From Dimorphilus gyrociliatus (taxonomy: Eukaryota > Animalia > Annelida): a stretch of 64,000 bases of DNA. The DNA lies in the NCBI GenBank assembly GCA_904063045.1, contig CAJFCJ010000013.1:912156-976155 (forward strand), read 5' to 3'. Every line of letters starts with the position of its first letter. Within the stretch, counting starts at the first letter, position 1. This document shows positions 26,003 through 52,242 of the stretch, in pieces. A program made the position numbers and the translations under genes. The notes below the pieces were generated by a model, which was not told where the DNA came from, ran no database searches, and worked only from the letters and a program-made list of their open reading frames with translations.

Positions 26003-29000
26003 ATGCCATCACCCTATCAAATTTTATTTGAAATTAGCAAGTACTAAGAATAATTATTGCAAAACTAATACGTCTGCCCTCTCTATAGAAAGAAAAATAA
26101 AAGTATTGAAGAGTTTTCTGCTAAATTTTTGTCATTTTTCAATAAAATACAGGTTATATTTATCGATAGAGAACTCGTAGTAATTTCTTCTAAAAGGCAA
26201 CTTAAACAATGGCGAATATCTCACCCAACAAGGCGACACTACATAAAAGGGACATTATCAGTAAAGAATGCTATCCTTACGATAGGTTCCCAATTCATTG
26301 TTTCCTTAAAAGATCCAAATTCGTTCGTATAGTTTATATATTTTAACATTATTTTCAATATTTCATTGTTATACTTCGTTCTAAGAACCATTTAACTTCG
26401 AAGTCTATACTCCATCTAGAAATGGAAAATTTAAGTTTTATGAATGATTTTGTTATGTATGCTCTTTCAAACTGTAGTGGAGAAGGGGTAAATATCTTTA
26501 TAATATTATTTCTTTCTTTCAATCAATCAATCACTCATTTCGAATTTCTACAGTTTGAATTTTATTTATCATCATCTTCATTTAACGGCTATAGATTCAC
26601 CGATTGGTTAATTTATTGGCTATCTAGACATTTGTCGAAGAAGAGTATGGTTTGTTTACTTCTATTTAAAATAAAACCATTATTTTGATATACATGGGGG
26701 ATTGCTTATAGAATCATACGAAAATATCCAATATACCTATAACGTCTGGAGGAATATTCAACCTCAATACAACTGAACTTGTTTGTGAATGATTAAGAAT
26801 TTATCGCTGGAATATTAACAACATTATTTTTTTAAAGCAATTTCCTGCATCTTCTTGCTTTTCAATTCCCGAAAAATGTTTCAATTTTATCAATACTCTT
26901 AAATCTCTTAATCCCTATATTGATAGGTGTCTATTAAAAGAAGAAAATTGCAGAAATGAGTCAATTGGTTGGCAATTTATTCCCATAAGATGTTTATATA
27001 ATTGTTATTTTTTGAAATTTATAGCGTCACTTGAAAATTATAATAAACATATTTTGGATACTACTAAAATGGTTATTGTACATTTTGAGAAATTGTACCC
27101 TGAATCGCAGACAAAATGTCATCCATTTAAAAGGATGAGTTTCATTGACATTTTAACAGATAATTATCACGTTTCGACATCATCTCCAATGAAATTTTTG
27201 AAATGCGATTCGTATTTCTTATACGAATGCTTTGAAGTGAGTTCATCCTTTTTATCAATACTATAAAACGTCTCTATTAATCCTTATTGTTCCTTTCTAT
27301 AGGAATTCTATCCACTATTCTACTGTGAGAAATCGGTAGCAATAGTTCCTTGCACTACTTTAGAAGGAAATCAAAGTGTACTAGCCAGTCATTTCTGTGA
27401 TATCGCTATCTCATTTATTTTAAACGTAAGCGCTTTTACCTTTAAAAAAGAATTAATTAGCGTCTAATTGATTATTTAAAAAACAAAAGGTCTTAAAACC
27501 GTTAAATGTCCATGGAATTCTCTTCGTATGCATAGGAAAGGAAGATAAAACTTTAATAAGCAGTTTCAATAGTTATCTATTGAAAAAGAAGAATGATTTA
27601 GCAAATTTGATTGGTGAACAAATGAAGTTTGTCTCTATCTTATATATATATATATATATATTAATTATACAAAAATTATATTCTGATTAAATGTTAAAAG
27701 AGTAGAAGTTCTTGAAAAATTGGACCAAGCTGGACAAAATAGAGTGCATCATCTAGTTGCTCTCCACGAAATATTATCATTGTGCATTGAGAAGAAAAGT
27801 ATTGATATATTATTCCTTCAAGATGTTAACAGATCGGTATTTACAATAATAATCATTGGTATATATCGGTTTAAAAAGATTATATATATAATAGGCTATA
27901 TATAAATCTGCTGACAAACTCCACAAAATAATTATATCAAATTGCGAGTGGCTAAAGGTGTGTATGACCTACTTAAAAGTGATAATAATTAAAAAAACAA
28001 CCGAAATTTTGTTCATAGTACGGTAGTCCAGCTATTAATGAATTTAAAAAAAGTATTAGTAGTATGAAGAATGTACTAGCACATCCTTCAGAAATTGTTA
28101 CAAACATTCCTCCGAGTATTATGAGTTCTGGTAACGTCTGAATATATTTTTGTATTTCTTCACTCAAGTGAAAATAATTCAATTTCTTTTTATCTTAGCT
28201 GCCAAAAATCTGACCCCTTACCTGGTGAACGATGATACGAGAAAGAAGCACAAATCCCTTTTGGAAAGTTTAGAAGAATCGTATTCCGAAGATATATTTG
28301 TAAAGATTGTTTAATAATATTTAAATGATAATTTTTTAATATGGACTTTTATCATTTGCAGTCGGAAAAGGCAACAAGTAGATATTCTAATATTGTACAA
28401 TCGTTGATGCGTTTTCCCTATTCGACTGCACTGGAATTTCTACATATTACAGTAAACTTTTGTGCTTAAAAAAAAAATAGAAGCCCTTTGTAAATTGCTA
28501 AAAATTTTCAGGGAGATATAATAAGTTATAGAGAGGTTCTAAGAGAAACTAAAAGATATGTCACAAAGCCATCAAAATTGATTAATAAAATGAATGAGAT
28601 GGGAGAAAACCTGACAAAAGCTGATGAAATTTGTGACTATTATTTGCCTTTTCTAGATAAAGGAACATCGTATTACGATTCCGGCCATCTTATAGCATCA
28701 GAATTAAAATGCTGTCCAGTTGTAAGATTCATATTTGAATTTTTATTTTGCAATTTCCATATGCAAATTTAATTCTTCTGTACAGGATCTCCAAGAAATG
28801 GGATTGGGACTAAGGATAGTAAAGCAGACTTTCATTTTACCTCATTGCCTAAATCGTTATACGAATAGAGAAGTACGAGCAATACTTATAAAAGGAGAAA
28901 ATCTACGAGATCATAAATAACTTAGGTTTATCAACAGTTACAATCGCCTAACTCAGATCAAGCCTCCATTGCGTACAAGTTTGTGCATGGAATTGATAAC

Positions 29001-32000
29001 TCCCTCTCATGGCGAATTATTCAAATGTTCTTTCTAGTATATTATCATGCAAAGTCGTACTTTGTTGCGAAATTATATTGCAATTTAATTATTATTCAAT
29101 GCGGAACTTCAGAGTTATCCGTCCACGTAGAAAGTTAGTATAAAAAAACAAAGTTGTAAAAGAAAAATGACTGATATAAATACTAATTATTCCATTACTA
29201 TAGATAATGAAATAATTATAATTTGTTCCACTGTAAGAACTGATGATAGTCATCTCTATTTGGCCAATTTTCTAGTAGAAGCTTGCTCTATTGCAGAGTA
29301 TATTTTACATCTTGGGAAAGTCTATTATCAAGTTATTATTATCATATATTCATAGATATATATTTTTTATTATATATTGAAAAAAATCACATATAAATCT
29401 GTCAATTTTTTTACCTTTCTTTAATCAAGAAAGAAGAAATTCACGAATGGAATGGAAAAGATGACAAACAAAAGTTTAATGAATTCAGTAAAAGATAATT
29501 GATAAATTATTTTCTCTCTTTATCTCTTTTCTTTCTTCATATCCTAATACTATTTTTTTTTTATAAAAAAGGAAATAACTTTGTTATTAGATTGGAACAT
29601 GAGTTTATTGACGTTGAGAAGCAAAGTAATCTATTTAAAAAGAGAATGATTTGGGTAATTTAATCTTTTTATTAAAAAAAAATAATTAACAATCTTGTGT
29701 TTTTTTTAATAAAAAAAAAACAAAGCTTTTTCACAAAACTGTAAATCCAACTTCCTTCGAAGAGGTTCCATTTTGCGAAGATGTACCTGAAAATAGAAAT
29801 GAAAGAAAATTATCTAAATGCCGTACCAATACTACTGAGTTTAATAGAAAAAACCAATTATTATACTGGAAAATGAATGTTACAAACTTTAACCGAATCG
29901 AAATACCAGCAAACTGCGATATATTAATAGCGTATAAACAAAATTAAATTTTGCTATTGTTTATCAATCTAATTAATCTTATTTTTTTATAGGTCACAAA
30001 AGTATGTAACTATGTCTTTATGTCTTTCCTTTTATATTTACTATTTTATAAAATTATTATCTAAAAAGAATGGATCCTACTACTATAGCAGTAAAAGAGA
30101 AAAAGAAGAAGACTATAGATGATAATACAAATATTCATTATTTAGAATTGAGCATAAAAGACACTGTAGTACCGATTGTTTTAAGATCTGAATCAAGAAT
30201 TATGATAAAAATGAAGGAAATAGGATATTGTACATCGGTAAGTAGGGGAAATGAATTTTTCTGTAAAACAAAATAATGCAACTCTAATATCCTATATGTA
30301 CATTTGTTGAAAGGAAAAAACTGTTTCAAGATTACTTATTTATGCTGATGAAGTACTCATTCATAGAGATATCATACCAGTAACTGATTACAACGTGAAA
30401 ATTACTCCAAAAGAAGATTATCCGACTATTAACTTGGATTTTGCACCTGTACATTTTATTCTTGATACATTATATCTTTTCTTTCCTCATTTTTCTTTTC
30501 ATTTAATTAATTTACTCATTTTTCCTTCGATTTGCCTCCCTTCTAAGACTATCGAATACGATAAAGGATCCTTACTTAAGGTTGGCATGAAATTTGAGGG
30601 CTGGGACGTAGAGACTCGTCAGACACGTGTCGCTTCTATAGGTTTAATTGTTCGAATTGTTTTAATAGAGTTTTATAATTACCAATTTATCATATTGTAG
30701 CGGCTATTGACCCATTCGAAAATCAGATTTTAGTTCACTTTGACAGAATGCATGATTACAGTTTCTGGATTGATGCATCGGAATCGATACATATCTATCC
30801 CGTTGGTTGGACTGAAGAGAATGAAGATAAAAAAACAAATTCTAATAGACTACAACCTCCCCAAGATTATGACTCTTCAACATTTAATTGGACAGATTAC
30901 CTGGAGTATCTTAATAAAACTGCAATACCAAAAGCTTGGTTTGATAAGGTAATATATAATTTGTATATAAAATTTACAATAAAGAAAACTTTACTTACCA
31001 AAAGCGAGACAATAATTCAAAAGATATTTGTCCAGCAATCATCAATTTTCCAAAAGAATTCGACTATAAAATAATGAACGACGGTAGATTTTATCACCTT
31101 AATTAGCTAACTAATCAACTAACTAGAACATATTTTTCTACAGCACTCTTTACAAGCGCTTGTAAACTGATATTGGAGAATACAAGAAAACTTAGTGGAA
31201 TAATGAAAACTCCGACTGGATCCCGTCAATGGATCCTAAATACAAATGTGCCTTTAACGAGAACAAAATGCTTTCGATTGAAAGATATAGAAGAGTCGAA
31301 GATTAATTTTGCGTACTTACTTTGCGAAGGAAGTAGACCAGCCGATATGCATATATTTACTAACTTGGAAAGAGAAATTAAAGATATATCGGAAGAGAAT
31401 ATGCTCTTATTTAAAAAGTTTACGATATGCCAATTAGCAAGGATATTACAAAATGTTAAAGATCAAAGAAAAGCGAGAAATTATTCAAAAATAGCATCTT
31501 TATATTTTTATTTTTGCTATTTGGTTAAGACGCATCAATTAGACGACATTGCCGAATTTGGAAAGACTTCTAAAACAACTAAAAGTCTTTGTAAATTTAT
31601 TGATAAATATTTCGAACAGTCGGAATATTTTAAAGATAGGAATGGAAAATCTTCTATAGCATGTTCATATCATAAAAAGAGATCGCAAGCTCGTGATGAA
31701 GGTAGTTTTTGCGAACAAATAGTTTCCTCGCTAATTGAAGTGTTAGACACCATAAACTCCAGCAACGTTAAATTGTTTTTAAGCTGGCCCGATAGGTTTG
31801 ATTGTCTTGTTATATATTATATAAACTATATAATAGTCTATATTACAGAATTAATGGAATATCCAGTATTGATGTAGATGGGATAGAAGATATACCGAAA
31901 CATTTAGGATATATATATAAATGTATGTTCTTGACGAATTTAACAATAGAAAATTGTGGAATTAAGGAAATAGGAGACGAAATTATTCACCTTTCGAATA

Positions 32001-35000
32001 CATTAGAGACAATATCACTTTCTGGGAATCCTATTGTGAAAATGTCTGATAATTTTTACAAATTACGCGGTCTTCAACGGATAAATGTGTCTAATACGAA
32101 AATAACGAATCTTTCTAGGCAGTTTCTTGAATTCAATGCCTTACGAGATCTTAACGTTTCTGATAATTATTTGGACGAGTTTCCCAGCTTTCTAAGCAAA
32201 CTGACATCTTTAATACACTTAAACGTATCCGGTAAAGAGATATATCCTTTTCGAGAGAAGCAGGCTTTAACGAAAAAGGATTTTGAAAATTATTTATTGA
32301 GCTTAAATGAACATTGCGTTAATATTCCCAATGTTAGACGTGTCTTTGAAGAGAAGATAATAAATAAAGAATACATAGAAGGAGAACAAATTGAAGAACT
32401 TCACGCCCAAATATTTAAGGAAATGCCTCATATTAGAAAATTTCCAGAGATTGACGACAACAGCTTTCAACGATTAGAAACGCTATTGTTAATGAATCAG
32501 AATTTGTTATCTATAGATCCGTCTATTGTTAAGATAAGTCGGCTAAAGCGTATAGACCTTAGCAATAATCCATGTTTGGAGGAAGTACCAGCTATTAGCA
32601 CTAACGAATTAAGATCAATATCATTAAAAGGCTGCGGTTCTTTGAAAACTCCTCCAAAGGAAATAGTAGCTAAGGGGCATTTTGCTGTTTTAGGATACCT
32701 TAAACGACTCTCTAAAGGTTCAGTAGTTTGTCGAAGAACTAAACTAATGTTAGTGGGTCTAGGAGGAGCTGGAAAGACCAGTTTGATGAAATCACTTATT
32801 TCCGAACAACCCACCAAAACACCTCCTGACGTTACTGACGGTATTGATATCGTTAATTGGGATGTAGGATCGTTAGTCTATTCTCTTTGGGATTTTGCTG
32901 GTCAAACTGTTTATTATAACACACATCAATACTTTTTATCAAATAGAGCCATATATATCCTAGCGTGGAATGTTCGCCTGGGACACGAACACTCCGGTTT
33001 AAAGTTCTGGCTTAGTTCTATTGAATGCCATGCTCCAAAGACACCGGTTTTAGTTGTTGGAACTCATATCGACGAAGTAAGAAACATTTTAAGATATTCT
33101 TTAAAAGTTTAAATTCGAACCTTTATAGATATATACTGTATATATATATATTAATACATTCCTATTTTTCAAGGTTGAAAAATCAGAATTACCGGAAATC
33201 GAACTACAAAGACGTTATACTCAGATTAAAGGATTTTATTACGTATCGTCGTTAACTAATATTGGAATTGATGAACTACGAAACGATTTAATTCAAATAA
33301 CATTGAAACAAAAATATATGGACGAAAAGATACCAAAGATATGGTTAGACTTTGAGGAGATCCTACTAAAGTAGATTTTCTAATACTGTATTCCTATTAG
33401 TGGTGTTAAGCTAATAATTGTTATTTAGATACAGAAATTCCAATTGTAACGTGCTAGAATTTTCAACGATTGCTAAAGTAGCAGAAGAGAAATGCCATAT
33501 CAGCCGAAGTGAACTAGTACAATGTATTGAATTTTTACACGAATTGGGAGCAATACAATACTTCAATAACGAATTCCTAAAGAATAGAATTGTAGTTAAT
33601 CCCCAATGGATTGTTGATGTAATGGCTTGTGTTGTTTCTGTTAAATTAAGCCCCATTGTTGATGGTAAATTCTATCATAAAGATATACGGTCAATTTGGA
33701 AAGATGACCAATTTCCAGAAGATATGCTCAGCTGGTTGTTAAAATTAACTGAAGAATTTGATTTAACATTTTGCCTTAAGCAGGATAAAGCTAACCTGGT
33801 ACCTTGTTTACTACCTGAAAGAGAACCGGAAGTAAGTAAATTCCATTTGAAATATTATATATACATTCACTGATATCATCTTTTTCTTATAGTTTGAATG
33901 GAAAAATCTGATTGAATCGGACGATGAAATCGAAATGAAAATGATATATAAGTTTGATTATCTACCATCCGGTCTATTTAATAGAGCCCAAGTAAGACTA
34001 CATCAATTCTGCGATGAGTCGCTTATATGGAGAAAAGGAATGTTATTGAATAAGAATATACATAGAGCTTTAATGAAACAATTAAAGTAAGCATCAAATT
34101 ACTCTTCCAACTCTCTTTAGAAACTTAATGCTGCGCATAAATTCTCTAGCGATACTACTGTTCTCGTTCGAGCTCAAGGATTAAAGCCCGACAATGTTCT
34201 ATTTTTAGTTCATGAAGTTTTTGAAACGTTAATTGCAGAATCATTTAGCGGTGTGAGATACGATTATAGCATACCTTGTCCAGAGTGTCTTCGATACGTA
34301 ATTAATTTCTCTTGTTATTGTTTAAAACTAAATACTTTAATACTAATCCTTCGCTGTTTAATAGTTTAGTGCCGATCCTTCAATGATACCGGGTCAAAGG
34401 ATTCGAAAAGCAATTGCTCTTAAAGTACCATTTCTGCAATGCGTTGAAAATTTCCATACTATGTCGATAACTCAACTAAGATCTGCTCTACCTCCTGAAA
34501 ATTCGGAAGATTTCGATATTCAACTGCAAAAAAGCGTTAATGAATTGCGTAATATCAAATCAAACCTTTGTTTGAGTATTATCATTATGTACTCGGAATC
34601 GGATTTACCAAAATCCGGCTTAGAATATACAGTAGTCGGTTTACCTATGTTACAGAGAGACCTGAAAAATAAAGGATACGATACGTATGTTAATCAAAAC
34701 AATTTTTTATTATAGAGTGTATAAATCTATTTATCTATTTAAAATAGTAAAACAATTAATGATATGGATAATCTGTCTATGGAAGAGATGATTAGTACTA
34801 TAAAGGAGTCTCAGGTTTAAAAAAAATTTGTAGTTTATAAAATAGAACACGAGAACGCTAATTAAAGAAAAATGTTCCATTTTTTGCAGATTGTTTTGGT
34901 ACTAATTAGCGATGCTTTCGTAAAAAATCAAACAACAAAAAATTTATTCATATACATTAAAAAATTTCTTAATAAGAGAACTCAGTTAATTCTTACTAAT

Positions 35001-36711
35001 GATGATAAAGAATGGAAAAGCGACTTCGAAGTCGGACCTCTTTGCGCCGATGATGTTTTTATATCGATGAATAGTATTGATAAATATCAGCTTAGATTTC
35101 AAGATTTAATCGATAATATTTCAAAACATGAAACTTTGAGTCGTGTTAGTATTCTCTCTTTTCCACCTTTTTATTCCGCTATTAAAATAATTCTTCTCTT
35201 TTATAGACTGATTGGCCACCCTGTTTTATTAGCTATTGTTGGTCTAATTCTTTATCAGCAATCGCTAAGGGAACAAAATCCACCGACAAGAGTAAAGGAC
35301 TAGTTGATCCTAGAGACTTAAAAGATGTTCTTGAAAAGAATGATATTAAATGTTGGATGGACGTTGAGCAAGTTGGTCAATCGGGTTTATTTCAAGATAT
35401 TGCAGAAGGTTTAAAACACGCTCGAGTGGTTGTTGTATGCGTATCCGACGAGGTATGATTACAATTATTTTGTCAGCAGATATATATAAATTATGCTGTA
35501 TATTGTATCTAGTACGTTAACTCCCGAAACTGCCAAATGGAATTTCGTTTTGCCGCTATTACATTAAGACTACCAATTATTTTCGCTGTAGTAGGTACCG
35601 GTCAGGATTGGGTTCGCTCAGAAGTTTGTATTAACCTTGTTGATTACCTTATTATATATATGATATAAAATATAATTCAATCATTTAGATTGGAATGATA
35701 TCGTTAAATCATTCAAGAGTTAATCTACAATCACCTAATTATGATTTGAACGATGTTGCTGAGCTAGTTAAACCACATTTAGACAATTTTGACGATATTA
35801 AGAATAAAGAAATTGCTCTAAAAGAGAAAATTGATCAAAGAGCTTACAAAGAGATATTAGAATTGGCTCAAAGGAAATTATTGCGTCAAGTTATTGGTTT
35901 AGCTAATAAAATCAACGTTGGCTATTTACCTCATTTACCAATTTTAGATTTTGAATGCGATCAAGATTCTAAGATAAAAAACTATCAATTTGTCTTTCTT
36001 TGTGAACACGAAGAAGGTTGGCATATTCCTAATGAAAAAGCTTCGAAACAATGGGACATGAGTCCTGGTACATCGGATGAAAATGAAAACTTAAAGCTAT
36101 GGTCTCCCTATTTAGCTAGAATCTTTGCCATTCTAAAGTTCACATCCATTGAACTCTCGATACTAAAATTCAGTATTGGTCAAGAAATTGTTAACGGGTT
36201 AATTGAAAAATCAGTTCAAGCAGAAGATATTAGCGATTCCAGTTTCGAAAAGGCCTACACGCAAATTATGAATTCTCTAAACGAACTGGTAGACATATTC
36301 CTGAATGAGGATAGCTGTTTAGCTAGATGCTATACAGGCAGTGGAAAAATACTTTGGCTTTGTAAAGAACATCAGAATCTTCCAAGAATAACTAAATTAG
36401 AACTAGAAGAAGGGGACAAAGGACGGGCGTTAAATTCCGTAGAATCCGATAGAGATCAGAGATTTGCTGATCGAGTTAAAATGGCTAACAAAGTAGGTGC
36501 AGAGAAGAGCGTACAGTTGAGAGGAAAATTTATAGGTGCTCAAGTGGCCGCTGATTCTGCTGTCAAGTTAAATAAGATGAAAGAAGCTGATGTAGCTAAA
36601 AATATTGAAAAATCAGATTCAACAATTGATATAGCTGAAACTGCTAAAACTGTTATTGGACAATCTATAGCAAAAGAAAAACAAACCAGTAGAGCCTGCG
36701 TTATCACTTGA
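26003..36711 (+). CDS. Giant ROCO protein A: degenerate Roc-COR, MBT, LRR, Roc, COR, pseudo-TIR, TIR, CaaX; multi-exon
   Basis: LRRs (31.85-32.65 kb); Roc KLMLVGLGGAGKTSL, WDFAGQ, VGTHID; COR EFLHELGAIQYF...VNPQWIVDVM and YKFDYLPSGLFNRAQVRL; TIR CFISYCWSN...CQMEFRFA; MBT LKVGMKFEGWD...LVHFD...FW...YPVGW...FNWTDYL; ends RACVIT*. The MBT-to-LRR join is inferred via a 56-nt intron (30949-31004) and a short exon 31005-31083. The start at 26003 is tentative. Confidence 0.8.
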
Positions 36712-41513: not shown

Positions 41514-44500
41514 TTACATTATTAGGCATGCCCGACTTTTCGTCTTTCGATTACCGGACAAAAGCTCCTGAACCATCATCTTCTTAGGAGTTTCGATGGA
41601 TTGATTAGAATCAGTATTCCCTCTTGATTCCAATTTCTTTTCGTTTCTTTTCTCTAAATAGTTGGCGCCTTCAACTGCTATTTCGGCTCCTTTAAATTTT
41701 CCACGGATTTCAACGCTTTTTCTCCTATCTTTTATTTTATCTAGTATACCAATTGAAAATTGTTCATCTTTTGTCTGAATGGGAGTTTGTTCTTGAATAA
41801 CTTCTTTGTTATCTATCAAATTTACACGTAGTTGTTTCTGATGTATATTACAAAGCCAGGCTAATTTTCCATTAGTCATTTGACATTTAGAAAGAGGTTC
41901 AACCGCAGTTCTTTTAGGCTGATTTTTTGCCTCCATATTATTTATAGACGTTAATAACGAATTATAGCAGCTCTCAACGTCCAGCTCTTTATTCTCTTCG
42001 AATACGGATTTGGCGTAATTCAACGCTTTACCAACCATAGCGTCTCCCTCTTGCGTATTGAGAATGAGTAGAGGAATTGCTGTTTGTTTCAATATTAAAT
42101 ACAATTTGGCAAGGTAACCACACCATTTTCTAAACGTATCATCAACTTCGTTACTTTGCCAGTCGATAACCCATTCAATTTTATTGTTTTCCGGTGGAAT
42201 GTGCCATCCCTAAATAGGTAAATGAAACGATATTAGGCGGAGATTATCCAATGATAGAAATAAGCTTACCTCATCGTATTCGCACAAGAAAAAGAAACAA
42301 TATCCCACTATGTCATTGTCCTTTGAGTCGTTTGAATTCCTTTTTAAAAAGTCAATTACTGGTAGACGAGGTAGTTTTCCCTGACAGAAGACTTTGTCAA
42401 AAGAGGATAAATATCTAACAAACTTCCTTTCAGTCAGTTCTAATAGTTCACTAAATTCTTTCTTTTTTGATATAGTGTTATTGGATGATGATTTCTTTGG
42501 TTTATCTTCTTTGTTCTCTATGTAACCCTTAATCAATTCAATTATCTTTTTAGTATCTTCTTCCAAAGAAATCATATCGAATTTAGGATAATCTAATCCA
42601 AGCATCCCGACTTCAGATTTAATCCATCCCAAACCACTTCCAACAATAACGATAATAACTGGTAAACGTAAAGTTAGAGCTGCAAAACGAAATTCCATAA
42701 TGCAGTTTTTCGATGTGACGTACTCTTCCGATACGCATGCAATCACAACTTTAGCCATTTTGAGACCTTCCGCAATATCCTGATAAAGACCAGCTTGACC
42801 AACTTGTTCAATATCCATCCAACATCTAATTCCGGCTTCTTCGAGTTTTGTTTTTAAATCCCTGGGATCAATCCTGCCAAGAGCGGATTCTATCAATTTC
42901 GTTCCTTTTTTTACAGCCTGTCTAGAGTTGCTCCACGAGTAGCTGATGAAACAATGAGGTTGAGCCTGCCTTTTTTCGCAATCGTATTCTTTACAAATAG
43001 ATTTCCTCAAATCTTTCATTTTTGTATCAAAATTCTTAAACTCTTTCATATTAACATAAACCTGAAAATACAAGAAGAGATCGTAAAAAATTGATTCAAG
43101 TCGATAAAAATAACAACAGCATCAGAGCACAAAATTCCAATATCGGGATCCTTTTTCCAATTTTCATTGTTATCAATTAAGACTAATCGTATCTTAGCAT
43201 CAAATTGTTTCTTTGCGTAAAGGAAAAGCTGTTTACAAGTTTCATTACAGACAAATTTATGAGTCATGAAAACCATAATAGTATCCGATTGTTTTAACGA
43301 CATAATCGTCTCTTCAACTTGATTTTCTGATTCTTCGTTGTAGCTCGATCTTTGAAGATTAAATTAAAGGATGATAAGAAAGTCATTTAAAAAAAATTTT
43401 ACGTACACAGACACTTCGGTATCTTCCAAATTTTCTTGTATCATCTCCGGAGTTACAATATCTCCAGATTCGGCAGTAGTTTTATAATCTTCCAAACAAT
43501 AAAGAATAGCAAGATTATTTTTAATAGATGATTTCATCTTTTTAAGATCTCTTAATGAGCTTTGTAGTTGAGAGTCAAAATCTTCATTATTTTCTGGAGG
43601 TAACATATCTAGAGGGAAAGATAATTCAACAGGATTAAATGATAATTTCATTTATCAGCTATTTTAATAATTTTACTTTGTAGTTGATTTAAGGATAAGG
43701 TATGAAAATTATCATAACATTGCATAAATGGTATCTTGAAATCTAAGGCTCTTCGAATTCTCGTAGACGGTAGCATAGATGGTTCGGATAATCCGTGACG
43801 TACGCATTCACTACAAGGAACGTGATAATCGTATTTTACTCCGACAAAAGATTCTGCAATTAGGTTTTCGAATACTTCGTGAACCATAAACAAAATATTC
43901 TCTGGTCGTGGTCCTCGAACTTCAACCAAAACCGTTGATTTGCTATAATCGATAGTTGTAAATATTTTACATCATTTCTATTCATTAAAATGTCGATTAT
44001 ATTGTTACAAACTCTGTTTTTTTAATAAATCCTCTATGGATATTTTTCCTTAGAAGAGAGCCGTCTTTCCATAGTTTCAATTCATCACTGTATTGATGGA
44101 GCCTTACTTGAGCTCTATTAAAAAGTCCGGATGGAAGATAATCGAAATTGTAAATCATTTTCGTTTGAACTTCTTGTTCGCCCAAGGTATCTCCTTCCCA
44201 GAAAGTCTTTATAAGCAAATAAGTCCATTTATATAGTATATATAAAAAAAAAACTATAAATGGCCTACTTCAGTATCAATTGATGGAAGGAGACAAGGAA
44301 TTAAATTAGCCGATCCTGATTTTAAGGGAAATGATAAATCAAATTCTTCCGTTAATCTAATAAGCCAATAGTGCAGTTCGGATGGATAAATATTGGTAGG
44401 CCATACTTTATTTAGGTCACAATGCAACAGTTTTCCATTCTTCAAACGTAAAATTCATAATTAAATAGTCATTATCGAAAAGGAAATTCTCTAATAGACC

Positions 44501-47500
44501 TACTTTTACGGCATTATCATGAACGGAAATGACGCAAGCCATCACATCGACAATCCATTGAGGATTGATGACTACTTTATCCTTTAGAAATTCATTTTCA
44601 AAATGTTGTAGGGTTCCCAACTCGTGTAACAAACGAATCGCTTGAAACGTCTTAATTAAATCGAAGAAAGAGAGAGAGAGAGAGAGAGAGAGATAGAGGG
44701 AAATAGATGATAAATTAATAATTTGGAATTACTAACTAGTTGGAATTTACCTCAAATTTATCATTAAATCCAAACATTGCCCCAAAACCAATAACTTCTT
44801 CCAACGAGAGAAGACTGGTAAAGACTCTGTATCTATTATAAAAGATAACGAAATGGCAAAAGATTACATATGAATTTTTCAATTCAAAATCCAATTTACT
44901 CAATGATTTTATTCTCAAAATCCAACCAAATTTTAGGTATCTTTTCATTCATGTATTGCTGTTGTAGTGTAACTTCAACCATATTATCAACAAGTGTATT
45001 CACACCCTTTAGTAAAGGTTATATATATATATATATTGTATATACTTGTAAAGATGGTACAATAAATCTACATACTTGACCTGTTTTTGATGAAACGTAA
45101 TGGAATCCTTTGATTTGAGGATATCGTCTTTGAAGATGATGGATAGTTAATTCAGCTTTCTCAACCTAAGAGAGAATTGTTTTATTGTAAAATACGGCGG
45201 AGTGGATAAAATTAAAAATGAACTATACTTCGTCTATATGAGAGCCCACAACAAAAATTGGAGCTTTCGGAGCATGACATTCAATAGAACTTAACCAAAA
45301 TTCAAGACCAGCGTGCTCATGGCCTAGCCGACAATTCCATAGGAGAAAATAAACAGCTCTATTCGAAAGGAAAAATTGATGGGTGTTATAATAAACTGTT
45401 TGTCCGGCAAAATCCCAAATTGAATATTCAACTGATTGAACAAGCCACTTCTTTATTGTAATTCCATCAGTAACTGTTGTATTTATAGTATCATGACGAT
45501 CGTCATCAGATTTCTCTTTCATCATTCTATTGATAAGGCTGGTTTTCCCCGCACCTCCCAAACCTACCAACATTAATTTTGTTCTTCTACATTGAGTTGA
45601 ACCTTGTAATAGTCTTCTCATATAACCCTGAATAAATTTTAGACCTTTTACTACAATTTCTCTTGGAGGTGTTTTTAGTGCAGGGCAATTCTTCAATCGC
45701 AAGATTTCTATTGGAAGATGGCAAATTTCGGCGCTAACCTCCTCAAGAACAAAATTATTGGATAGATCTAAGATTTTCAAGGAAACCAAATATTTAATAC
45801 TGCTGTCCAAGACTTGAAAACTTTGATATTGCAATTCCAAAACAGTTAAGCTTTGACAAATCGTATTGTCTTTACACATATTAAATTTTAAATTTGAAAT
45901 TCTGGGTAATTTAGAATATAATCCAGAGCAAAACAGCTCCATCTCTTCCGTTGTCCATGAGTTACTATTCTGTAAAGCGGTTTCTTTAATCAATTCCTCC
46001 AAAGCATTATTATCCAAATTGAACTTGTTAAGATGCTTCCAATGTTGATGTGCTAATTGTCTAACATCATCCGTCAAGATTGATTTATTGATTCTATCCG
46101 GCATATAACCAAAAGCGTTAAATTTGAGTGTAATCAGATTTGATAGACGAAAGATGACCAATGGAAATATACTAAAAACGTTATATGATATAATTAAGAC
46201 CTCTAAATTATTTAGTTCAGCCAATTCGTCGGGCAGAGAATTTATAGGTAGGGAAGATAAATTTAAATATGTTAATCGCTTAAATGCACAAATTATCATT
46301 GGAAATGCTTTTAAAGCAGAGCACTCTGTCACTTCTAAGTGTGAAATTGTTGGTGCTAATGAAATTAGCTCTTGTGGTATATCTTCTATATCGATACCAT
46401 GCAATTTTAACGCTGTTATTGAGCTATTAACAAACGTAGTTAACTCTTCCTTTGGTATATCCACAACTTTCTGATTTAAAGAATGATGAAAATTACAAAT
46501 TATCTTTCGTTCACCTATCTTTATGTATTTTCGTTCGTTTGAGAAATAGGAAAAGCATTTTCTCCATTTTTCACTTGGGGATTCTTCAGACTTATCAATT
46601 TTCTTTGTTGTAGATAAACATTTTATAATCAAAAATGAAAAATAGAATAATAGCTGAGCCATTTCACAAGTACAATCTCTCTATTTGGACGAGGAGAATA
46701 TTTTGATAAAATACGCATCAATTATTTTATCTAATATTACGAAACTTACCATTTCATGATCTTCAAACTTCCAATTAGAAAACACTATAAACGATAAATT
46801 TTCCATTTGGGGACTATATTCTTGAGTCTGACCTGCACTTTTAATGATATGCTTGGTACGATGATTATTGTCCTCTGATTCGTAGCAGAAGGCATACGGT
46901 ATTAGCGTTTTACTTTTTATTATATCCGATAGAAAGGGTAAACATGTATCTCTCAGTTCATTCCTCATTAGAAAACCAATTGGATATTGAGCTACTGTTA
47001 TTAAATCTTTAATACTTCGAGAAAGACGCCCCTTTTTCTCAATGAAGTCTGTTTATGGAGTAAAAAAACAAATAGAGATTCAAATGAGCATAATCTATTT
47101 ATTTACCAACCCCTAGCTAGATTTTTATTTTCTGAATAAGGTTGCGCAACCAACTCGGTAAATCGTTTGTTTATATCCGGTTCACTTAATTTCTTAATAA
47201 CTTCTTTAGGAATTTGTTCGAACGCCATACACTTGATGAACTCTTCCCAATCAAGTTCTCTATCAGTAGTATCTTTTTGTTATAAATAAAAATCAATACG
47301 GCATTTCATTTTGATGAAAGATTAATAATAATAATAAATTGTATACCTATAAAGATATTTTTGCAGTATTCTTTTAATATCAGCAACGACAGTGATTTTA
47401 AATCTACCCATTTGAATTGTTCTTTAAGCCAACAATGGCTTATTTTAAGCTCTTTTTTATCATAACAGATATCACCTATAAAAATTAAATAAGATAGAAA

Positions 47501-50500
47501 GCATTTAAAAAGGGATTGTATTATTCGTACATATCGTAGCAATAGTAGCCTTAATAGATTTATCTTCTTTCTCAGCCATTACTTGAAACTTTTGTCCAAC
47601 CGCAATTTTATTTGGGGCTAATTCGTAGTTAATCTTCTACAAAACGAATATATAAAAGAAAACAGAATAAGTAAGATTTAGTTAAGTTAAACGAAGAGAA
47701 ATACTTACTGGAGCAAAAGTAAAATCTATATCGCTATTCGCAGCCAAATCCTCTCTAGTTTGTATAATCAATTGATAATAATCTTTAGGAACGTCTATAC
47801 AATCAGTAACTACATTATCAAGAGAAATTTTCATTTCAATTTCGTCACTATTCACGTGGAAATGATTTTTCGGATGATGTTTATATAATAATTGAATCTT
47901 TAAAAATGATAATTCGGCATAATACATTTTCCTTTGTATTCTTTCTCGATTATTCTTCCAAGATATTTCGTATCCATGATTTACAGTGTCGAATAGAAAC
48001 TGTACCGTATTCCTAGAGTAAGATAAAATTTTGTTTATAGGGATAAGATGAAAAATTTATTCAAACCATACATTTCTGATCTGAAAAGAAAAGAGCAATT
48101 AATTATTGATTTGAAATAAAATCCCATCGCCAACAACCCTTCGACCCTACCATCCCTGCCTTATTAGAATTACTATACATACATTAGAAGTATACTGTGT
48201 TTAACAGTTATTGGTCTTATTTTGAATGTATGGAAAAATAGCGGATCCATTAATGTTTTACAAAAGTATTTCTTTATTTTATAATCTTTGTTGGGATTAA
48301 TATTCATTGTTCTCAAAGTAAACTTTGAATTTTCTTCATCAGTAAAGTATATATCATCCATAGAAGATGGATTAAGTTCCTTACACATTTTCCAAATTAA
48401 ATGCGTTCTTAATGAATTCTCTTCTCTTACATCTTTAAACGATGTATAAAATACTTTAAAGTTATTAACTGTCAAATGAAGAATTAGGTAAAGATTGAAT
48501 GAAGAATAGGATTTATTTTAGATATACAAACAAAACGATAAGTTCTTCTCATCATCATAGTTTAGTTCGCTGCCCCATGGACTATCTAGTGTTCTCTTAT
48601 AAGAATAATAATAATAATTTAATTATAATCGATAAAGAAAAGTTTCACTCTTCTCACCTTGTAATATATTGACGACCTGTAAAATGCAAATTCAATAATT
48701 GTTGCTATTTCAAATAAAAAGCCAGCTATTAATGATGGCGCCTCTGGGAAGTCAAGAGTAGAACATATTACTTCTACATCAGAATTTCCCTCAAAAGAAA
48801 TGCAAGTTTCTACTGGACCATCATGAAGAACAATTCTTCCCTTTCTGAGCTGAACCAGGTAACCAAATGGATGCCCAATTTTGTACACTGAGGTAACCAA
48901 GTACAACAATAATCTGTGTAGTTCATCTGTATAAAGTTGACTGCAAATATGATAGTTCAGAATGACTGAGGTAGCTTCCTTTAAATTCTATACATGTATA
49001 TAGAGATATGCATAGAAAAATGAAAAACATCTTAGTATTTAAGTACGAAAACAAACTTTGCAATTTTCATACGCAGCTTCCGGTTCGGGTAAATCGTTTG
49101 AAAGGACACAGCAATTTGGAGATAAATCTAATACTAATCCCAATTGACAAAAAATATTCTTATTCAAATTAATTTCTTTCCTAGTCTAATAAAATGGAAT
49201 TGAAATTTATTATAATCATGTTAATTTAGTAAGGAAACAATTTAGGATAAGAACCAATAGATGACTGCTTTCAGCAAACGCTTTTGTCATATTCGTACAA
49301 ATTGGAGTATCCTTTGTTAAGAAGTAATACTCTCCTTTAAGATCATCTTGACATGGCTTGGAGTTTGCTTTAAGGGTTTCGAGAACTTTCGACAACCACT
49401 GTCGGCAGACAATGTGATAATCTTCATAGAAAAGTGACTTTACGAGCAAAATGAGACCCTGATTGACAAAAATTCCCTAAAAGAAGAGAACATTAAAAAA
49501 CTATGAAATTACGATCTTGTCGAGAAATTGCACAGCCTTGAAGTAGGGAAACCGATACATCGCCATAGCAATATCTGTACTGTATGTATTATCCAAAGCT
49601 ATTTCATTATACTGAAATCTAAAATCTAGGATATCTCGACGGATAATCCTCCTTGAATTAATAGCAGGTGCGTCTAGGTATGAATTATAATTCTATTATA
49701 AATCACATATAAACATTTTATGCCTATTACCTTGGCCAAATGAATCAACTGGAATAGTTTTAACAATTTCGTCTAGTGAAATAAACTCACTCTTTGTCTT
49801 TGTCATCTTCGCAAGTTTATCTCGTAACGACTCAACATTAGGGCATGTAGTCTTTAAATATTTAAGGTACAAATAAATAAGACTAAAGGCTATAATAATA
49901 ATAAATTAAATCGAATACCTTGAGATATCCTCTAGAAGAAGTTAAATTAACCGCCAAATTGGAAATCACTGTTGATAATGACTTTGAAGAACTTAAGTCC
50001 TTATTTCAAATATACTATATAATAGAGTAAAAGAATTATTTTAGTACGAAATACCTTTTGAAAATTTATCAACTGAGGCTGAAGATTTGAGTAGGAATAA
50101 AGCTCATTTTGGCTTAAAACCTCAGACAGAGCCAAATAATTATGTAAATTACGTTGATCTTTGAAATCCATATTTGCCAAATGATCTAATCTATACATTT
50201 AAAGGATTGCTTGAATAAAGTTTTTAATTAATTATCAATTCATTACGTTATCCGCCGTATTACGTTTTGCATTTCCTCTCTTCTTCCTTTTAACTTCTCT
50301 GATATTGAATTAACTTTTTTTGGTGCATTGCGATCAATTTGTAGTTCTTCTTCATTACTAGAATCATCACTTAACTCTGCATCACTATTTTCTTTCACCT
50401 GTTCTTCAACAAGGACTGCGGTAGGTATATTACTTTTTTCTAGAACCTCCCAGAAATTAATCAAGGGGAAATGTCGCGGAAGTAATTTCTTAAATGAAAA

Positions 50501-52242
50501 AAAGGGAAGAGATGAAATCTATTATAATAGGATGTTAATATTATACTTTGGTTATCATATATTCTACGATATTGCTACAAGCATCGATAATTCTGTTCTG
50601 ATCAAAATTTTTACATATCGGTACTATTATCAAACATTTATCAGTAGATATTAGAGGTAGGAATTCCTGGAATGGGTAAGAAACAAGAATTTTAATATGT
50701 AATATATGAAAAGTATATCCTCAACCTCGGAACATTCGTAATAAATGGCCGAGTCTATTTCGAAAGAGCGAAATGAATCGAAATCTTGAAATTTAATTTC
50801 AGACTTCAAAAGATAATGTTTTAGGTCAAATCTAGGCCATTTTCTTTCCTCAAACGGTCCTTCATACATTGATCTAAAGTGTACAATGACAATTTTTTTC
50901 TCCCTCACAGATCGTTTTTTGTGAGAAGCAGTAAGATCTTTTATAAAAGAAAAAATAAACGGAAGAGTTTGTCATTAATCGCTGAAGTTTAAAAAAAGTT
51001 TTCGATTTCTTCGTACCGTATCGTTTCGTTTCGCTTTTTATTGTAACTAATTCCAGAGGATCAACATATGGGTCAAGAGATCTCATATTTACGGTAAATT
51101 TTAGCATTTCTCGACTGGGAATAGCTACAGCATCTAAATTCAGATACTGTTGAAATAAATGATAAAATTAAATTGTATAATTGAATGAATATCTAACCTT
51201 GTTTTTACTCCAAGTCGAAGGACTTCTCATTATGGAACTAAGTTCGAAAAGGGTCCAGGAAGCTAGCTTTTCGCAGTTTGAAAGGTGAATCTAGAAAATA
51301 ATTAGATTAAATTTAAGAAAAACAATATCAATTTTCTAACATTTGCTATCAACATTTTTGAATTATTCTTCACTATCCAATAAATAGCCCAATCAGTTAA
51401 TGAACTACAGCCATGTAGTTTAAGTTCAGTTAATTTCGTATTTGCCTGTTACAAGAAAATATTTGTTTTAAATAAGAAAAGCATACCAGTTAGATAATAA
51501 GTTTTACTTGTGATTCTTCATCGTTTGGGAGTGCATAATAGAAGAATAAATCGTTTATAGTTGAAAGATTCGTCACGTTGACTGTGGTAAAACTCATCCT
51601 CAATAGTGAAGTAGTTCTAAGCAAATTCTTGAGAAAAAGATAAATATAAGATTTGAATTGATTTTTCGCAGAGACTACTACTCGACTTACATGTGGATTT
51701 TCGCTTAAAATTGCGTGAATACACACTTTCGATGACGAAAATATAACAGGGTTTGTTAGCAAACTATCAGTTATTTCTGCTGCTGCAAACTCCTCTGGTT
51801 GTTTCGAAGGAAGTGTCGAAAATTTTTGTGGTGTAATTCGTGTTTTAAGAACACCGTGTTGTTTAATCCCTTTTGATTTCGTTTTATCTTTTTTTACTGC
51901 TTCTTCGGGAGTAGCAAGTATTACATTTTCACCTTCTTCAGTCGGTTTGTTACTTTCCTTTTCTTCAACAGATTGTTGTGTATTTGCACCTTCATCTTCT
52001 TCGGAAGGTTTGTTCGCTTCCTCAGGAACAGTTTCCTTTTTCTGATTTGAATCTTCTTCGGAAGGTTTGTTCGCTTCCTCAGGAACAATTTCCTTTTTCT
52101 GATTTGAATCTTCTTTGGAAGGTTTGTTCGCTTCCTCAGGAACAATTTCCTTTTCCTGATTTGAATCTTCTTTTGCCGATTCAATACCTTCAGCCTCCAA
52201 TTTATCGGTAGTAGGAGGAGCAGGACCTTCTGATGCATCCAT
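41514..52242 (-). CDS. Giant ROCO protein B, paralogue of A with the same domain order; multi-exon
   Basis: ATG at 52242 (MDASEGP...). LRR + Roc (KLMLVGLGGAGKTSL, WDFAGQ, VGSHID) in ORF 45223..46662; COR LHELGTLQHF...INPQWIVDVM and YNFDYLPSGLFNRAQVRL; TIR HCFISYSWSN...CIMEFRFA; MBT-like IAVGQKFQVM...LDWEEFI; ends KSRACLIM*. Confidence 0.8.
44669..44692 (+). repeat. (AG)12 microsatellite forming the pyrimidine tract of a ROCO B intron
   Basis: Perfect dinucleotide run; reads (CT)n on the coding strand near the acceptor. Confidence 0.9.
51995..52170 (-). repeat. About 3 copies of a 57-bp coding tandem repeat (19 aa, EDSNQ[K/E]KE[I/T]VPEEANKPS[E/K]) in ROCO B exon 1
   Basis: GGAAGG anchors at 52003, 52060 and 52117 (period 57); units nearly identical. 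Confidence 0.95.

What the first reader, a model, noticed from the sequence alone, without database searches (positions are those of the whole stretch)
26003..52242. ROCO proteins with a second, degenerate Roc-COR module at the N-terminus and an embedded MBT repeat
Seen: besides the intact LRR-Roc-COR, both genes carry COR hallmarks upstream. A has RFPYSTALEFLHIT|GDII...RYVTKPSKLINKM (28.4-28.6 kb) and B has RFPYFKAVQFLDKI|GIF...HIVCRQWLSKVL (49.3-49.55 kb), with the same intron position; compare the true COR EFLHELGAIQYF...VNPQWIVDVM. COR-B-like segments follow (A: AYKFVHGIDNSLSWRII...IICST...LANFLVE; B: LHRLLLYL...LRKGRIVLHDG...VICST...IAGFLFE). Weaker Roc-like remnants precede them (A: VEVLEKLD versus VGTHID; B: IKFQDFDS versus IWDFAG), with no intact P-loop found. 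A single MBT repeat lies between this module and the LRRs. Known: Roc-COR dimerises through COR, and MBT repeats read methyl-lysine and usually occur in tandem. Inference: an internal pseudo-Roc-COR could act as a built-in dimer partner or regulator of the active GTPase. I do not know this architecture from characterised ROCOs (LRRK1/2, MASL1, DAPK1).
Basis: partly seen in the sequence, partly recalled or inferred. Interest (0 to 1): 0.82.

Follow-up and report, generated by a model that had tools for sequence, protein, structure and literature searches.

The report
Dead second Roc-COR in ROCO-TIR genes
Two neighbouring genes of the small marine worm Dimorphilus gyrociliatus encode giant immune-type GTPase (ROCO-TIR) proteins that carry, ahead of their working Roc-COR switch, a second copy of that switch that has lost its GTP-binding motifs. 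The dead copy is an old feature of the family that I could not find described in the literature.

Summary
The core observation holds. Gene A (+, CDS 26209-36711, 38 exons, 2674 aa) is covered by one spliced 9-kb RNA contig that joins all N-terminal exons to the LRR-Roc exon. Gene B (-, 52242-41514) is the public single CDS DgyrCDS9494; gene A is DgyrCDS9493.

The N-terminal module is a Roc-COR copy:
- For B, its profile matches the family's own live Roc-COR (hhalign 98.6%, E 5e-16, 399 columns).
- The AlphaFold model for B (pLDDT 77, pTM 0.81) hits only Roc-COR structures (C. tepidum Roco, LRRK1, LRRK2; Z 16).
- A is more diverged but collinear with B (hhalign 95-96%; Foldseek top 19 hits all Roc-COR).

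P-loop, G3 and G4 are lost.

Corrections:
- A's pseudo-Roc lies at 27.06-27.7 kb, not at VEVLEKLD.
- Only A keeps a detectable MBT; B's has decayed.

The dead module is present in 96 of 112 long family members, from Trichoplax to amphioxus. MBT-LRR-Roc-COR-TIR has already been drawn in silico (Trichoplax 2014, Aplysia 2022). I found no paper on the dead module. This scan already reported the same dead module on other paralogues of this genome. The proposed role as a dimer partner is untested.

The parts
26209..36711 (+). Gene A CDS (public DgyrCDS9493 = P0159, incomplete): 38 coding exons, 2674 aa, ends in CVIT
   Evidence: Joints of one 9008-nt spliced contig of run X1 plus length bookkeeping. 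P0159 is identical over its shared blocks.
27060..27707 (+). A pseudo-Roc (aa ~183-330): G-domain fold without P-loop, G3 or G4
   Evidence: Collinear with B's pseudo-Roc. The AF2 model's N-domain matches small GTPases and G-alpha at Z 8.4-9.2, 140-149 residues aligned.
27708..28376 (+).
   Evidence: Long helices in the AF2 models; alignment.
28377..28872 (+). A pseudo-COR-A (aa ~471-594), with ..LEFLHIT|GDII..KPSKLINKM
   Evidence: hhalign of the worm-only alignment against live Roc-COR, 95-96%. The glycine (G311 of P0159) is >=90% conserved in alignment A2.
28938..29486 (+). A pseudo-COR-B (aa ~595-721). Exons 29204-29331 and 29430-29487 are absent from the public protein
   Evidence: The contig length demands 464 nt here. 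hhalign. Foldseek COR-only hit 3dpt, 6.7e-6.
30548..30948 (+). A single MBT repeat (core plus the arm that follows), split by intron 30642-30700
   Evidence: Pfam MBT E 3.6e-9, 37 bits, full profile. L3MBTL3 4fl6 domain E 1.2e-13.
31850..33435 (+). A LRR region and live Roc (GLGGAGKT, DFAGQ, THID)
   Evidence: Pfam LRR_8 2.5e-16, Roc 3.5e-20.
33436..34391 (+). A live COR-A and COR-B
   Evidence: Pfam COR-A 5.7e-25, COR-B 1.7e-12 and 1.2e-7 on single exons. COR-B 1.5e-27 on P0159.
35207..35721 (+). A TIR domain
   Evidence: Pfam TIR_2 1.3e-6 on one exon, 2e-11 on P0159.
41514..52242 (-). Gene B CDS (public DgyrCDS9494 = P0164, which stops before the TIR). My splice model is approximate
   Evidence: Splice-PWM model. 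P0164 is identical over shared blocks to aa 2236. The tail is homologous to A. No RNA was laid on B.
50247..50937 (-). B pseudo-Roc with an acidic insert (KKIVIVHFRSMYEG, IKFQDFDS); approximate
   Evidence: hhalign. AF2 strands E13-19..E134-139. The N-part matches Arl2, Arf and G-alpha at Z 9-9.8.
49057..49692 (-). B pseudo-COR-A (..AVQFLDKI|GLI..CRQWLSKVL); approximate
   Evidence: Iterated HMM iE 6.9e-7 before its own inclusion; hhalign.
48658..48987 (-). B pseudo-COR-B (LRKGRIVLHDG..VEVICST..IAGFLFE)
   Evidence: hhalign. AF2 residues 473-582 at pLDDT ~90. VIA Z 16 on Roc-COR structures.
47347..47633 (-). B decayed MBT remnant
   Evidence: No Pfam or PDB sequence match. Local score against A's MBT is 52, versus 30.6 +/- 4.7 for shuffles.
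45229..46653 (-). B LRR and live Roc exon
   Evidence: Translation. Pfam Roc 1.5e-23 on P0164.
43677..44832 (-). B live COR-A and COR-B
   Evidence: Pfam COR-A 5.2e-28, COR-B 3.6e-24 on P0164.
42270..43061 (-). B TIR-bearing exon (not in the public protein)
   Evidence: 65% identity to A's TIR exon; tblastn.

Best explanation
Shown:
- A and B are tandem, convergently oriented paralogues of an ancient animal family of giant cytosolic ROCO-TIR proteins.
- Each protein reads: variable N-terminal head; dead Roc-COR; (MBT); helical linker; LRR; live Roc-COR; TIR region; C-terminal domain; CaaX-like end.
- The dead module is a full internal copy of Roc + COR-A + COR-B. It keeps the fold and a few hallmark residues (the COR-A glycine, the COR-B W..G strand) but has lost the P-loop, the G3 DxxG and the G4 motif. 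It should therefore not bind or hydrolyse GTP.
- It is far older than these two genes. It occurs in relatives from Trichoplax, molluscs, annelids, a brachiopod, nemerteans, rotifers, a nematode, a hemichordate and amphioxus.
- It evolves about four times faster than the live module (12-15% versus 50-60% identity across phyla).

Inferred:
- Roco proteins switch between COR-mediated dimers and monomers during the GTP cycle. So the most likely job of the dead copy is to act as a pseudo-GTPase scaffold for the live Roc-COR.
- It could do this as a cis 'pseudo-dimer' partner that holds the protein off, or as the contact for assembly with other copies.
- Either way it would gate the clustering of the TIR effector domains, in the manner of NLR-type immune switches.
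- I put about 0.3 on cis pairing specifically.
For: Single gene:
- One 9008-nt spliced contig spans 26000-31793 and continues beyond, with GT..AG joints.
- The reading frame is open through 38 exons.
- The public CDSs DgyrCDS9493 and DgyrCDS9494 also join both halves.

Homology to Roc-COR:
- The family's live Roc-COR HMM hits the N-terminal parts of 35 relatives directly at iE<1e-3 (Ptychodera 6.4e-13, paralogue DgyrCDS9499 2.9e-11).
- On iteration, B joins at iE 6.9e-7 before its own inclusion.
- hhalign of the N-module alignment against the live Roc-COR alignment gives 98.6%, E 5e-16, 399 columns running from beta1 of Roc to the end of COR-B.
- The worm-only alignment led by A gives 95-96%, E 4e-8 to 2e-9.

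Fold:
- B module: pLDDT 77.4, pTM 0.81. All 34 Foldseek hits at E<=1e-3 are Roc-COR structures. VIA Z 16.2 on LRRK2 1322-1860 and C. tepidum Roco 441-938.
- A module: the top 19 Foldseek hits are all Roc-COR, and the G domain scores Z 9.2.

Dead motifs.

Age and spread: 96 of 112 relatives with at least 900 aa ahead of the live Roc carry the module, and 0 of 78 shorter ones do. Trichoplax scores 5.4e-15.

Live module intact and highly conserved.
Against: - A's own sequence is too diverged to match alone (hhalign E 0.11; HMM iE 0.03). Its case rests on collinearity with B (blastp E 1.8e-20), the paralogue alignment and the fold.
- A's model came from the public protein, which lacks 62 residues of pseudo-COR-B.
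- A's whole-module rigid-body match is weak (TM 0.2-0.3, pTM 0.60).
- B has no RNA evidence here.
- Nothing measures nucleotide binding or any contact between the two modules.
- The complex prediction gave no verdict.
- A module at 12-15% identity could be under weak constraint.
Confidence: 0.8

Rival explanations
1. The dead module acts on its own rather than on the live Roc-COR. It could be a COR-type dimerisation or oligomerisation platform between two protein copies, or a docking site for another protein (for example a small GTPase or a ligand-recognition partner).
For: - COR-B is the best-predicted and best-conserved part of the module (pLDDT ~90; consensus W..G...Q.G.V in A1).
- The heads ahead of it vary between paralogues (MIP-T3 CH-like, discoidin, acidic repeats). 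That pattern fits a receptor-like front end.
Against: No partner is identified and nothing was tested. It is equally compatible with cis pairing.
Confidence: 0.3
2. The module is a decaying relic of an old internal duplication with no function beyond spacing.
For: - Only 12-15% identity across the family, against 50-60% for the live module.
- All catalytic motifs are gone.
- A has diverged beyond single-sequence detection.
- B has also let its MBT decay.
Against: - It is kept, in the same order and with the same hallmark residues, in 96 of 112 long relatives from placozoans to amphioxus.
- It still folds confidently in silico.
- A neutral stretch of about 600 codons would not stay open and recognisable over that time.
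Confidence: 0.12
3. The likeness to Roc-COR is chance or convergence: an unrelated alpha/beta domain followed by winged-helix-like domains.
For: - Pfam's Roc, COR-A and COR-B models do not see the module in A or B.
- G-domain-like Rossmann folds are common, and Z 8-9 is middling.
Against: - One continuous 399-column profile alignment in the right order, at E 5e-16.
- Direct HMM hits in 35 relatives.
- Pfam COR-B at 5e-5 in the amphioxus N-half.
- Every significant PDB match is a Roc-COR protein.
Confidence: 0.04
4. The N-terminal exons belong to a separate gene, wrongly fused to the ROCO gene.
For: - A contig across two genes does not by itself prove one message (the tool's own caveat).
Against: - For A, an uninterrupted frame runs across 27 RNA-supported joints into the LRR exon.
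- The same order of modules occurs in about 100 proteins of other phyla.
Confidence: 0.03

Closest known systems
Roco/LRRK Roc-COR tandem (C. tepidum Roco 6hlu/3dpu, LRRK1 8e05, LRRK2 8tzh/6vno)
   Same: - The live module has every Roc and COR feature.
- The dead module shares the three-domain fold and order (Z 16, 370-440 residues aligned for B).
   Different: - These proteins carry two Roc-COR units in one chain, the first without P-loop, G3 or G4 and with a long helical insert between G domain and COR.
- There is no kinase.
- The effector is TIR.
Invertebrate MBT-LRR-Roc-COR-TIR proteins described in silico: Trichoplax TRIADDRAFT_57945 (PMC4104024, Fig. 1), Aplysia LOC101848126 (PMC9334734), sea-anemone 'NG1' LRR-Roc-COR-TIR (PMC5094078)
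   Same: - Same family: Trichoplax P0211 and Aplysia P0196 are hits of my search.
- Same MBT, LRR, Roc, COR and TIR order as gene A.
   Different: - The passages I read in those papers (text searches for MBT, ROCO/ROC, COR and TIR) list only the domains that InterPro or Pfam sees, and none mentions a second Roc-COR.
- Here the dead module is shown, including in Trichoplax (5.4e-15).
MFHAS1/MASL1 (human LRR-Roc-COR protein)
   Same: - LRR-Roc-COR core without a kinase.
- Some relatives are labelled MFHAS1 by annotators.
   Different: MFHAS1 is about 1050 aa. To my knowledge it has no TIR, no MBT and no second Roc-COR.
Pseudo-GTPase domains (e.g. those of p190RhoGAP; from my own knowledge, not tested here)
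   Same: G-domain fold kept and nucleotide-binding motifs lost, within a larger signalling protein.
   Different: Here the dead G domain keeps its whole COR partner and sits in the same chain as its live paralogue.
TIR-effector immune switches (plant TNLs, SARM1, bacterial STAND-TIR systems; from my own knowledge)
   Same: Works-like analogy: LRR sensor, NTPase switch, TIR output that needs clustering.
   Different: - The switch is a Roc-COR GTPase, not an NB-ARC or NACHT ATPase, so it is not a member.
- No immune role has been shown.

Membership tests
ROCO (live module) | Roc G domain with G1 P-loop, G3 DxxG and G4 | tested here: met
   Pfam Roc 3.5e-20 (A exon) and 1.5e-23 (B). GLGGAGKT, DFAGQ and THID/SHID are present. 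These positions are invariant in alignment A3.
ROCO (live module) | COR-A and COR-B directly after Roc | tested here: met
   Pfam COR-A 3.4e-26 / 5.2e-28 and COR-B 1.5e-27 / 3.6e-24 on P0159 / P0164.
Roc-COR (N-terminal module) | Sequence homology to Roc + COR-A + COR-B in that order | tested here: met
   hhalign 98.6%, E 5e-16, 399 columns (B-led). 95-96% (A-led worm alignment). Pfam's own models do not reach it.
Roc-COR (N-terminal module) | Predicted three-domain Roc-COR fold | tested here: met
   B: Foldseek 2.3e-9 to 6hlu, VIA Z 16.2. A: Foldseek 1.5e-7 to 3dpu, G domain Z 9.2, weaker as a whole.
Roc-COR (N-terminal module) | Nucleotide-binding motifs (Walker A GxxxxGK[ST], DxxG, [NT]KxD) | tested here: not met
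   B has VHFRSMYEG at the P-loop site and QDFDSF at G3. A has VHFEKLYPE and only a GKED trace at G4. 74 of 80 family modules lack a Walker A. It is therefore a pseudo-GTPase, not an active Roc.
MBT repeat | Match to Pfam PF02820 above its gathering score | tested here: met
   Gene A: 37.2 bits against a cut-off of 22, E 3.6e-9, profile 1-68 of 69. Gene B: not met, with no hit at E<=0.05 and no PDB MBT hit at E<=10.
MBT repeat | Aromatic cage for methyl-lysine (Asp, Phe, Trp, Tyr of L3MBTL1 repeat 2; residue identities from my own knowledge) | tested here: inconclusive
   In the alignment to L3MBTL3 repeats, A keeps the Asp (EGWD), the Phe (HFD) and the Tyr (DYSFW) but has Met where the Trp stands (HFDRM). 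Binding was not tested.
TIR domain | Match to Pfam TIR_2 / TIR | tested here: met
   TIR_2 2e-11 on P0159. B's TIR exon is 65% identical to A's. Catalytic residues were not examined here.
NLR / STAND | NACHT or NB-ARC ATPase | tested here: not met
   No such Pfam family on P0159, P0164, P0210 or P0004. The resemblance is functional analogy only.

The most novel reading that the evidence does not exclude
The dead Roc-COR docks in cis on the live Roc-COR through the COR-B surfaces that Roco proteins normally use to dimerise. That would make these proteins single-chain versions of the Roco dimer. Ligand sensing by the head, MBT or LRR, or GTP loading, would open the pseudo-dimer and free the TIR domains to cluster and signal. 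This would be an animal immune switch built on a GTPase/pseudo-GTPase pair and conserved since before Bilateria.
Probability: 0.2. Interest if true: 0.85.

Novelty: new variant of a known kind. Interest (0 to 1): 0.62.

Why it matters
How Roc-COR dimerisation couples to the GTP cycle is the central open question for LRRK2 and Roco proteins. A natural family in which a live Roc-COR sits in one chain with a catalytically dead copy of itself would be a ready-made asymmetric system for testing that coupling. The family has kept this arrangement from placozoans to amphioxus.

The finding also changes the annotation of more than a hundred 'uncharacterised' invertebrate ROCO-TIR proteins, which immunome surveys list as odd TLR-like or MyD88-like genes. 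About 600 residues of their unexplained N-terminal halves now have an identity.

For this genome, it corrects two public gene models (DgyrCDS9493 and DgyrCDS9494).

Tried and rejected
- **Pfam on ten N-terminal exons of A, one by one:** nothing at E<=10. The exons are too short, so this is not evidence of absence.
- **Own-genome searches with exons 28512-28721 and 31146-31793:** each found only itself. The N-terminal halves of the paralogues are too diverged for this tool.
- **A alone (aa 300-800) against the live Roc-COR alignment:** E 0.11.
- **Adding A to the family alignment with mafft --add:** A was misaligned and hhalign gave E 0.34. I discarded this as an alignment artefact.
- **Reading A's KLDQAGQ as the G3 motif (hhalign):** rejected. 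The collinear A/B alignment and B's model place it in the helical insert, and the true G3 site of A is at ..MKF..LKCDSYF.
- **A family-wide pseudo-TIR after the dead COR:**
  - The live-TIR HMM gave no N-terminal hit below 1e-3.
  - hhalign of the following 300 residues against the TIR alignment gave E 0.68.
  - That segment set still overlapped COR-B in many proteins, so its intended negative control against Roc-COR was not clean.
- **Complex prediction, live Roc-COR (A3) with pseudo-COR (A1 326-591):** score 0.00, 'no answer', and my alignments were not used. This is neither support nor evidence against.
- **Splice dynamic programming:** a low intron penalty over-spliced. I fixed it with a high penalty plus manual curation against B.
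- **tblastn mapping of P0164 onto the window:** failed under my identity filter. B coordinates therefore come from my approximate model.
- the joined spliced protein of A was never sent to any search or fold tool. Only single exons by reference, or the public proteins P0159 and P0164, were used.


Full report
**What is there**

The window is AT-rich (about 31% G+C). It belongs to a 77.9-Mb assembly (window = contig C13:912156-976155). The public names of the paralogues' proteins identify the organism as the annelid Dimorphilus gyrociliatus. Two long genes face each other:
- Gene A lies on the + strand.
- Gene B lies on the - strand.

Six-frame comparison shows they are paralogues. Their C-terminal halves are 40-65% identical. 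Their N-terminal halves show only faint similarity.

On single exons of A, Pfam finds LRR_8, Roc (3.5e-20), COR-A (5.7e-25), COR-B, TIR_2 and half an MBT repeat. The Roc exon has eight further close copies in the genome. Four of them lie within about 130 kb on the same contig.

**One gene or two?**

The only public run that holds the region (X1) is stored as contigs, and these are spliced. One 9008-nt contig covers 26000 to 31793 and runs on, with GT..AG joints throughout.

I rebuilt the joints that the tool did not list, using the contig's own coordinates as a length constraint:
- An intron at 27627-27700, dropped by the tool at a TA repeat.
- A 9-nt micro-exon at 29993-30001.
- Between 28938 and 29654 two chains fit. 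I kept the one with the better splice sites.

The 3' half was modelled with a splice-site matrix learned from the 27 RNA-supported introns, then curated against B.

The result is 38 coding exons, ATG at 26209, stop at 36709-36711, and 2674 residues ending in CVIT.

Comparison with the public proteins:
- DgyrCDS9493 (P0159, 2330 aa) is identical to this model over its shared blocks. It starts at residue 186 and lacks five internal stretches, among them residues 660-721 of the module in question.
- DgyrCDS9494 (P0164, 2369 aa) is gene B. It joins the N-terminal half to LRR-Roc-COR in one CDS but stops before the TIR exon.

No search or fold tool received it. Those tools received single exons by reference, or P0159 and P0164.

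**Is the N-terminal module a Roc-COR?**

I built an HMM of the family's own live Roc-COR from 222 sequences. I searched it against everything upstream of the live module in about 190 relatives.
- It hits the N-terminal parts of 35 proteins directly at iE<1e-3, always with the COR part and often the end of Roc. Examples are Ptychodera 6.4e-13, the worm paralogue DgyrCDS9499 2.9e-11, and amphioxus 7e-6.
A scores 0.6-0.7 at its FLHITG site.
- A profile rebuilt from the first 18 hits brings in B at iE 6.9e-7, over residues 680-909, before B itself is in the profile. About 80 proteins join.

Profile-profile comparison of the N-module alignment (B first) with the live Roc-COR alignment gives 98.6% probability, E 5e-16, over 399 columns in one piece. 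The pairings in B are:

| Dead module | Live module | Site |
|---|---|---|
| KKIVIVHFRSMYEG | TKLMLVGLGGAGKT | beta1 / P-loop |
| IKFQDFDSFRSF | EYSIWDFAGQTVY | G3 |
| AVQFLDKIGLI..CRQWLSKVL | AIRLLHELGTL..NPQWIVDVM | COR-A |
| LRKGRIVLHDG..VEVICST | LWKDGSLLRKN..VLVEVRG | COR-B |

**Structure**

B's module (P0164:335-925) was folded from a 72-sequence alignment of N-modules only, without templates.
- It gives pLDDT 77.4 and pTM 0.81.
- All 34 Foldseek matches at E<=1e-3 are Roc-COR structures. These include C. tepidum LRR-Roc-COR 2.3e-9, RocCOR 3dpu 7.9e-9, LRRK1 1.4e-8 and LRRK2 1.3e-7.
- VIA-align gives Z 16.2 over 369-396 residues on LRRK2 1322-1860 and C. tepidum 441-938.
- The first 260 residues alone match Arl2, Arf and G-alpha at Z 9-9.8.

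A's module had to be folded from the public protein (P0159:1-540), which lacks the last beta-alpha-beta of COR-B.
- It gives pLDDT 72.3 and pTM 0.60.
- Its top 19 Foldseek hits are again all Roc-COR (3dpu 1.5e-7, LRRK1 4.4e-7, COR-only 3dpt 6.7e-6).
- Its first 210 residues match small GTPases and G-alpha at Z 8.4-9.2.
- The whole-module superposition is poor (TM 0.2-0.3).

**Gene A in particular**

A is the most diverged member. Alone it matches nothing. Its assignment rests on four things:
- Collinear similarity to B over residues 29-768 (blastp E 1.8e-20).
- A worm-only alignment led by A that matches live Roc-COR at 95-96% (E 4e-8 to 2e-9).
- The shared intron before the COR-A glycine.
- The fold.

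A's pseudo-Roc lies at residues ~183-330 (27060-27707).
- TKMVIVHFEKLY sits at the P-loop site.
- ..MKF..LKCDSYF sits at the G3 site.
- ILFVCIGKEDK sits at the beta5/G4 site.

The cited VEVLEKLD lies in the long helical insert that separates the G domain from COR in both genes.

**Dead or alive?**

Neither module has a Walker A, a DxxG or an [NT]KxD, and 74 of 80 family modules lack a Walker A. The live module is the opposite. It is 50-60% identical across phyla, with invariant P-loop and DFAGQ residues. The dead module is 12-15% identical.

**MBT**

A has one complete MBT repeat, core plus the arm that normally precedes a next repeat.
- Pfam E 3.6e-9.
- L3MBTL3 single-repeat E 1.2e-13.
- Three of the four cage positions I know from L3MBTL1 are kept. 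The Trp position is Met.

B has nothing that Pfam or a PDB sequence search can see. It shows only weak positional similarity to A's repeat (score 52 against 30.6 +/- 4.7 for shuffles). The paralogue P0004 also lacks a detectable MBT.

**Spread and age**

Relatives with the same C-terminal half come from molluscs, annelids, a brachiopod, nemerteans, rotifers, the nematode Plectus, hemichordates, amphioxus and Trichoplax. Many list an MBT.

| Residues ahead of the live Roc | Relatives | With the dead module |
|---|---|---|
| At least 900 | 112 | 96 |
| 300-899 | 78 | 0 |

Trichoplax scores 5.4e-15, so the duplication predates Bilateria.

Two further observations on relatives:
- In amphioxus, Pfam itself gives a sub-threshold COR-B (5e-5) followed by a TIR_2 (8.6e-5) in the N-terminal half. 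This hints that a whole Roc-COR-TIR unit was once duplicated. I found no such pseudo-TIR family-wide.
- The extreme N-terminal heads differ even among the worm's paralogues: a MIP-T3 CH-like domain, a discoidin domain, and acidic repeats in B.

**What it likely does**

Nothing here measures function. The architecture (variable head and LRR, a GTPase switch, TIR output, a CaaX-like end) reads like an NLR-type switch that uses Roc-COR in place of a STAND ATPase.

From the literature on C. tepidum Roco and LRRK2, Roco proteins cycle between COR-mediated dimers and monomers. A dead copy of Roc-COR in the same chain is therefore best explained as a pseudo-GTPase scaffold for the live one. I rate cis pairing at about 0.3.

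The single complex prediction allowed returned 'no answer'. It counts neither way.

**Prior knowledge**

The combination MBT + LRR + Roc + COR + TIR is not new:
- It is drawn for Trichoplax in a 2014 review (PMC4104024, Fig. 1).
- It is mentioned in an actiniarian immunome paper (PMC5094078).
- It is described for Aplysia LOC101848126, one of my hits (PMC9334734).

Four full-text searches found no description of a second or pseudo Roc-COR within one ROCO protein. Phrases such as 'second Roc domain' refer to the other protomer of a dimer.

After my own tests I found that this scan had already reported the same dead module on other paralogues of this genome (s1-172110, s1-081912). My results agree with those reports. 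They add A and B, the state of the MBT in each, and the Trichoplax case.

**Verdict**

The finding is real and partly corrected. It is an undescribed variant of a known protein family rather than a new kind of system. The mechanism is open but directly testable.

Noticed in passing
window 29204-29487, 26209-26760 and other blocks of gene A: The public model DgyrCDS9493 (P0159) starts 185 codons too late. It also omits five coding stretches that the RNA contig's length requires or that homology supports (my aa 660-721, 788-818, 1037-1062, 1622-1646, 2131-2159). One omission cuts the Roc domain, which explains its weak Pfam Roc score.
   Followed up: partly
window 41514-43061 (-): The public model DgyrCDS9494 (P0164) ends before the TIR exon and the C-terminal domain. 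By homology to A, both continue in frame to a stop at 41514.
   Followed up: partly
window 29993-30001 (+): A 9-nt micro-exon (GTCACAAAA) with good splice sites on both sides. The read tool reported it as 'CAC between' the joint 29933^30065.
   Followed up: yes
window 49459-49512 (-): After B's FLDKI codon there are two in-frame acceptors 18 nt apart, giving introns of 36 or 54 nt. This could be alternative splicing that adds GIFVNQ, or the upstream site may simply be unused.
   Followed up: no
window 51920-52200 (-): B's first exon encodes three near-identical acidic repeats of about 19 residues (..EEANKPS.EDSNQKKE.VP..). They are absent from A.
   Followed up: no
window 34392-35144 (+) and 43115-43608 (-): Between live COR-B and the Pfam-detected TIR there are about 200 residues conserved between A and B. 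Their strand/helix pattern looks like a second, Pfam-invisible TIR-like domain.
   Followed up: no
P0007 (Branchiostoma lanceolatum) residues 676-865: In the N-terminal half of the amphioxus relative, Pfam gives COR-B (5e-5) followed by TIR_2 (8.6e-5), then two MBT repeats. This suggests that a whole Roc-COR-TIR unit was duplicated.
   Followed up: partly
P0215 (Owenia fusiformis) residues 21-189 and 663-984: This annelid relative has a fully intact Ras/Roc-type GTPase at its extreme N-terminus (Pfam Ras 8.8e-39) in addition to the dead Roc-COR and the live one.
   Followed up: no
G000 C13:944755-1072686 and C61, C63, C5, C57: There are nine close copies of the Roc exon, five of them clustered within about 130 kb. 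The heads differ between paralogues (MIP-T3 CH-like in DgyrCDS14676 and DgyrCDS14632, discoidin in DgyrCDS14654). That looks like exon shuffling at the N-terminus of a receptor-like family.
   Followed up: partly
window 36697-36711 (+): Gene A ends in CVIT, a CaaX-like motif. It is the subject of another note of this scan.
   Followed up: no
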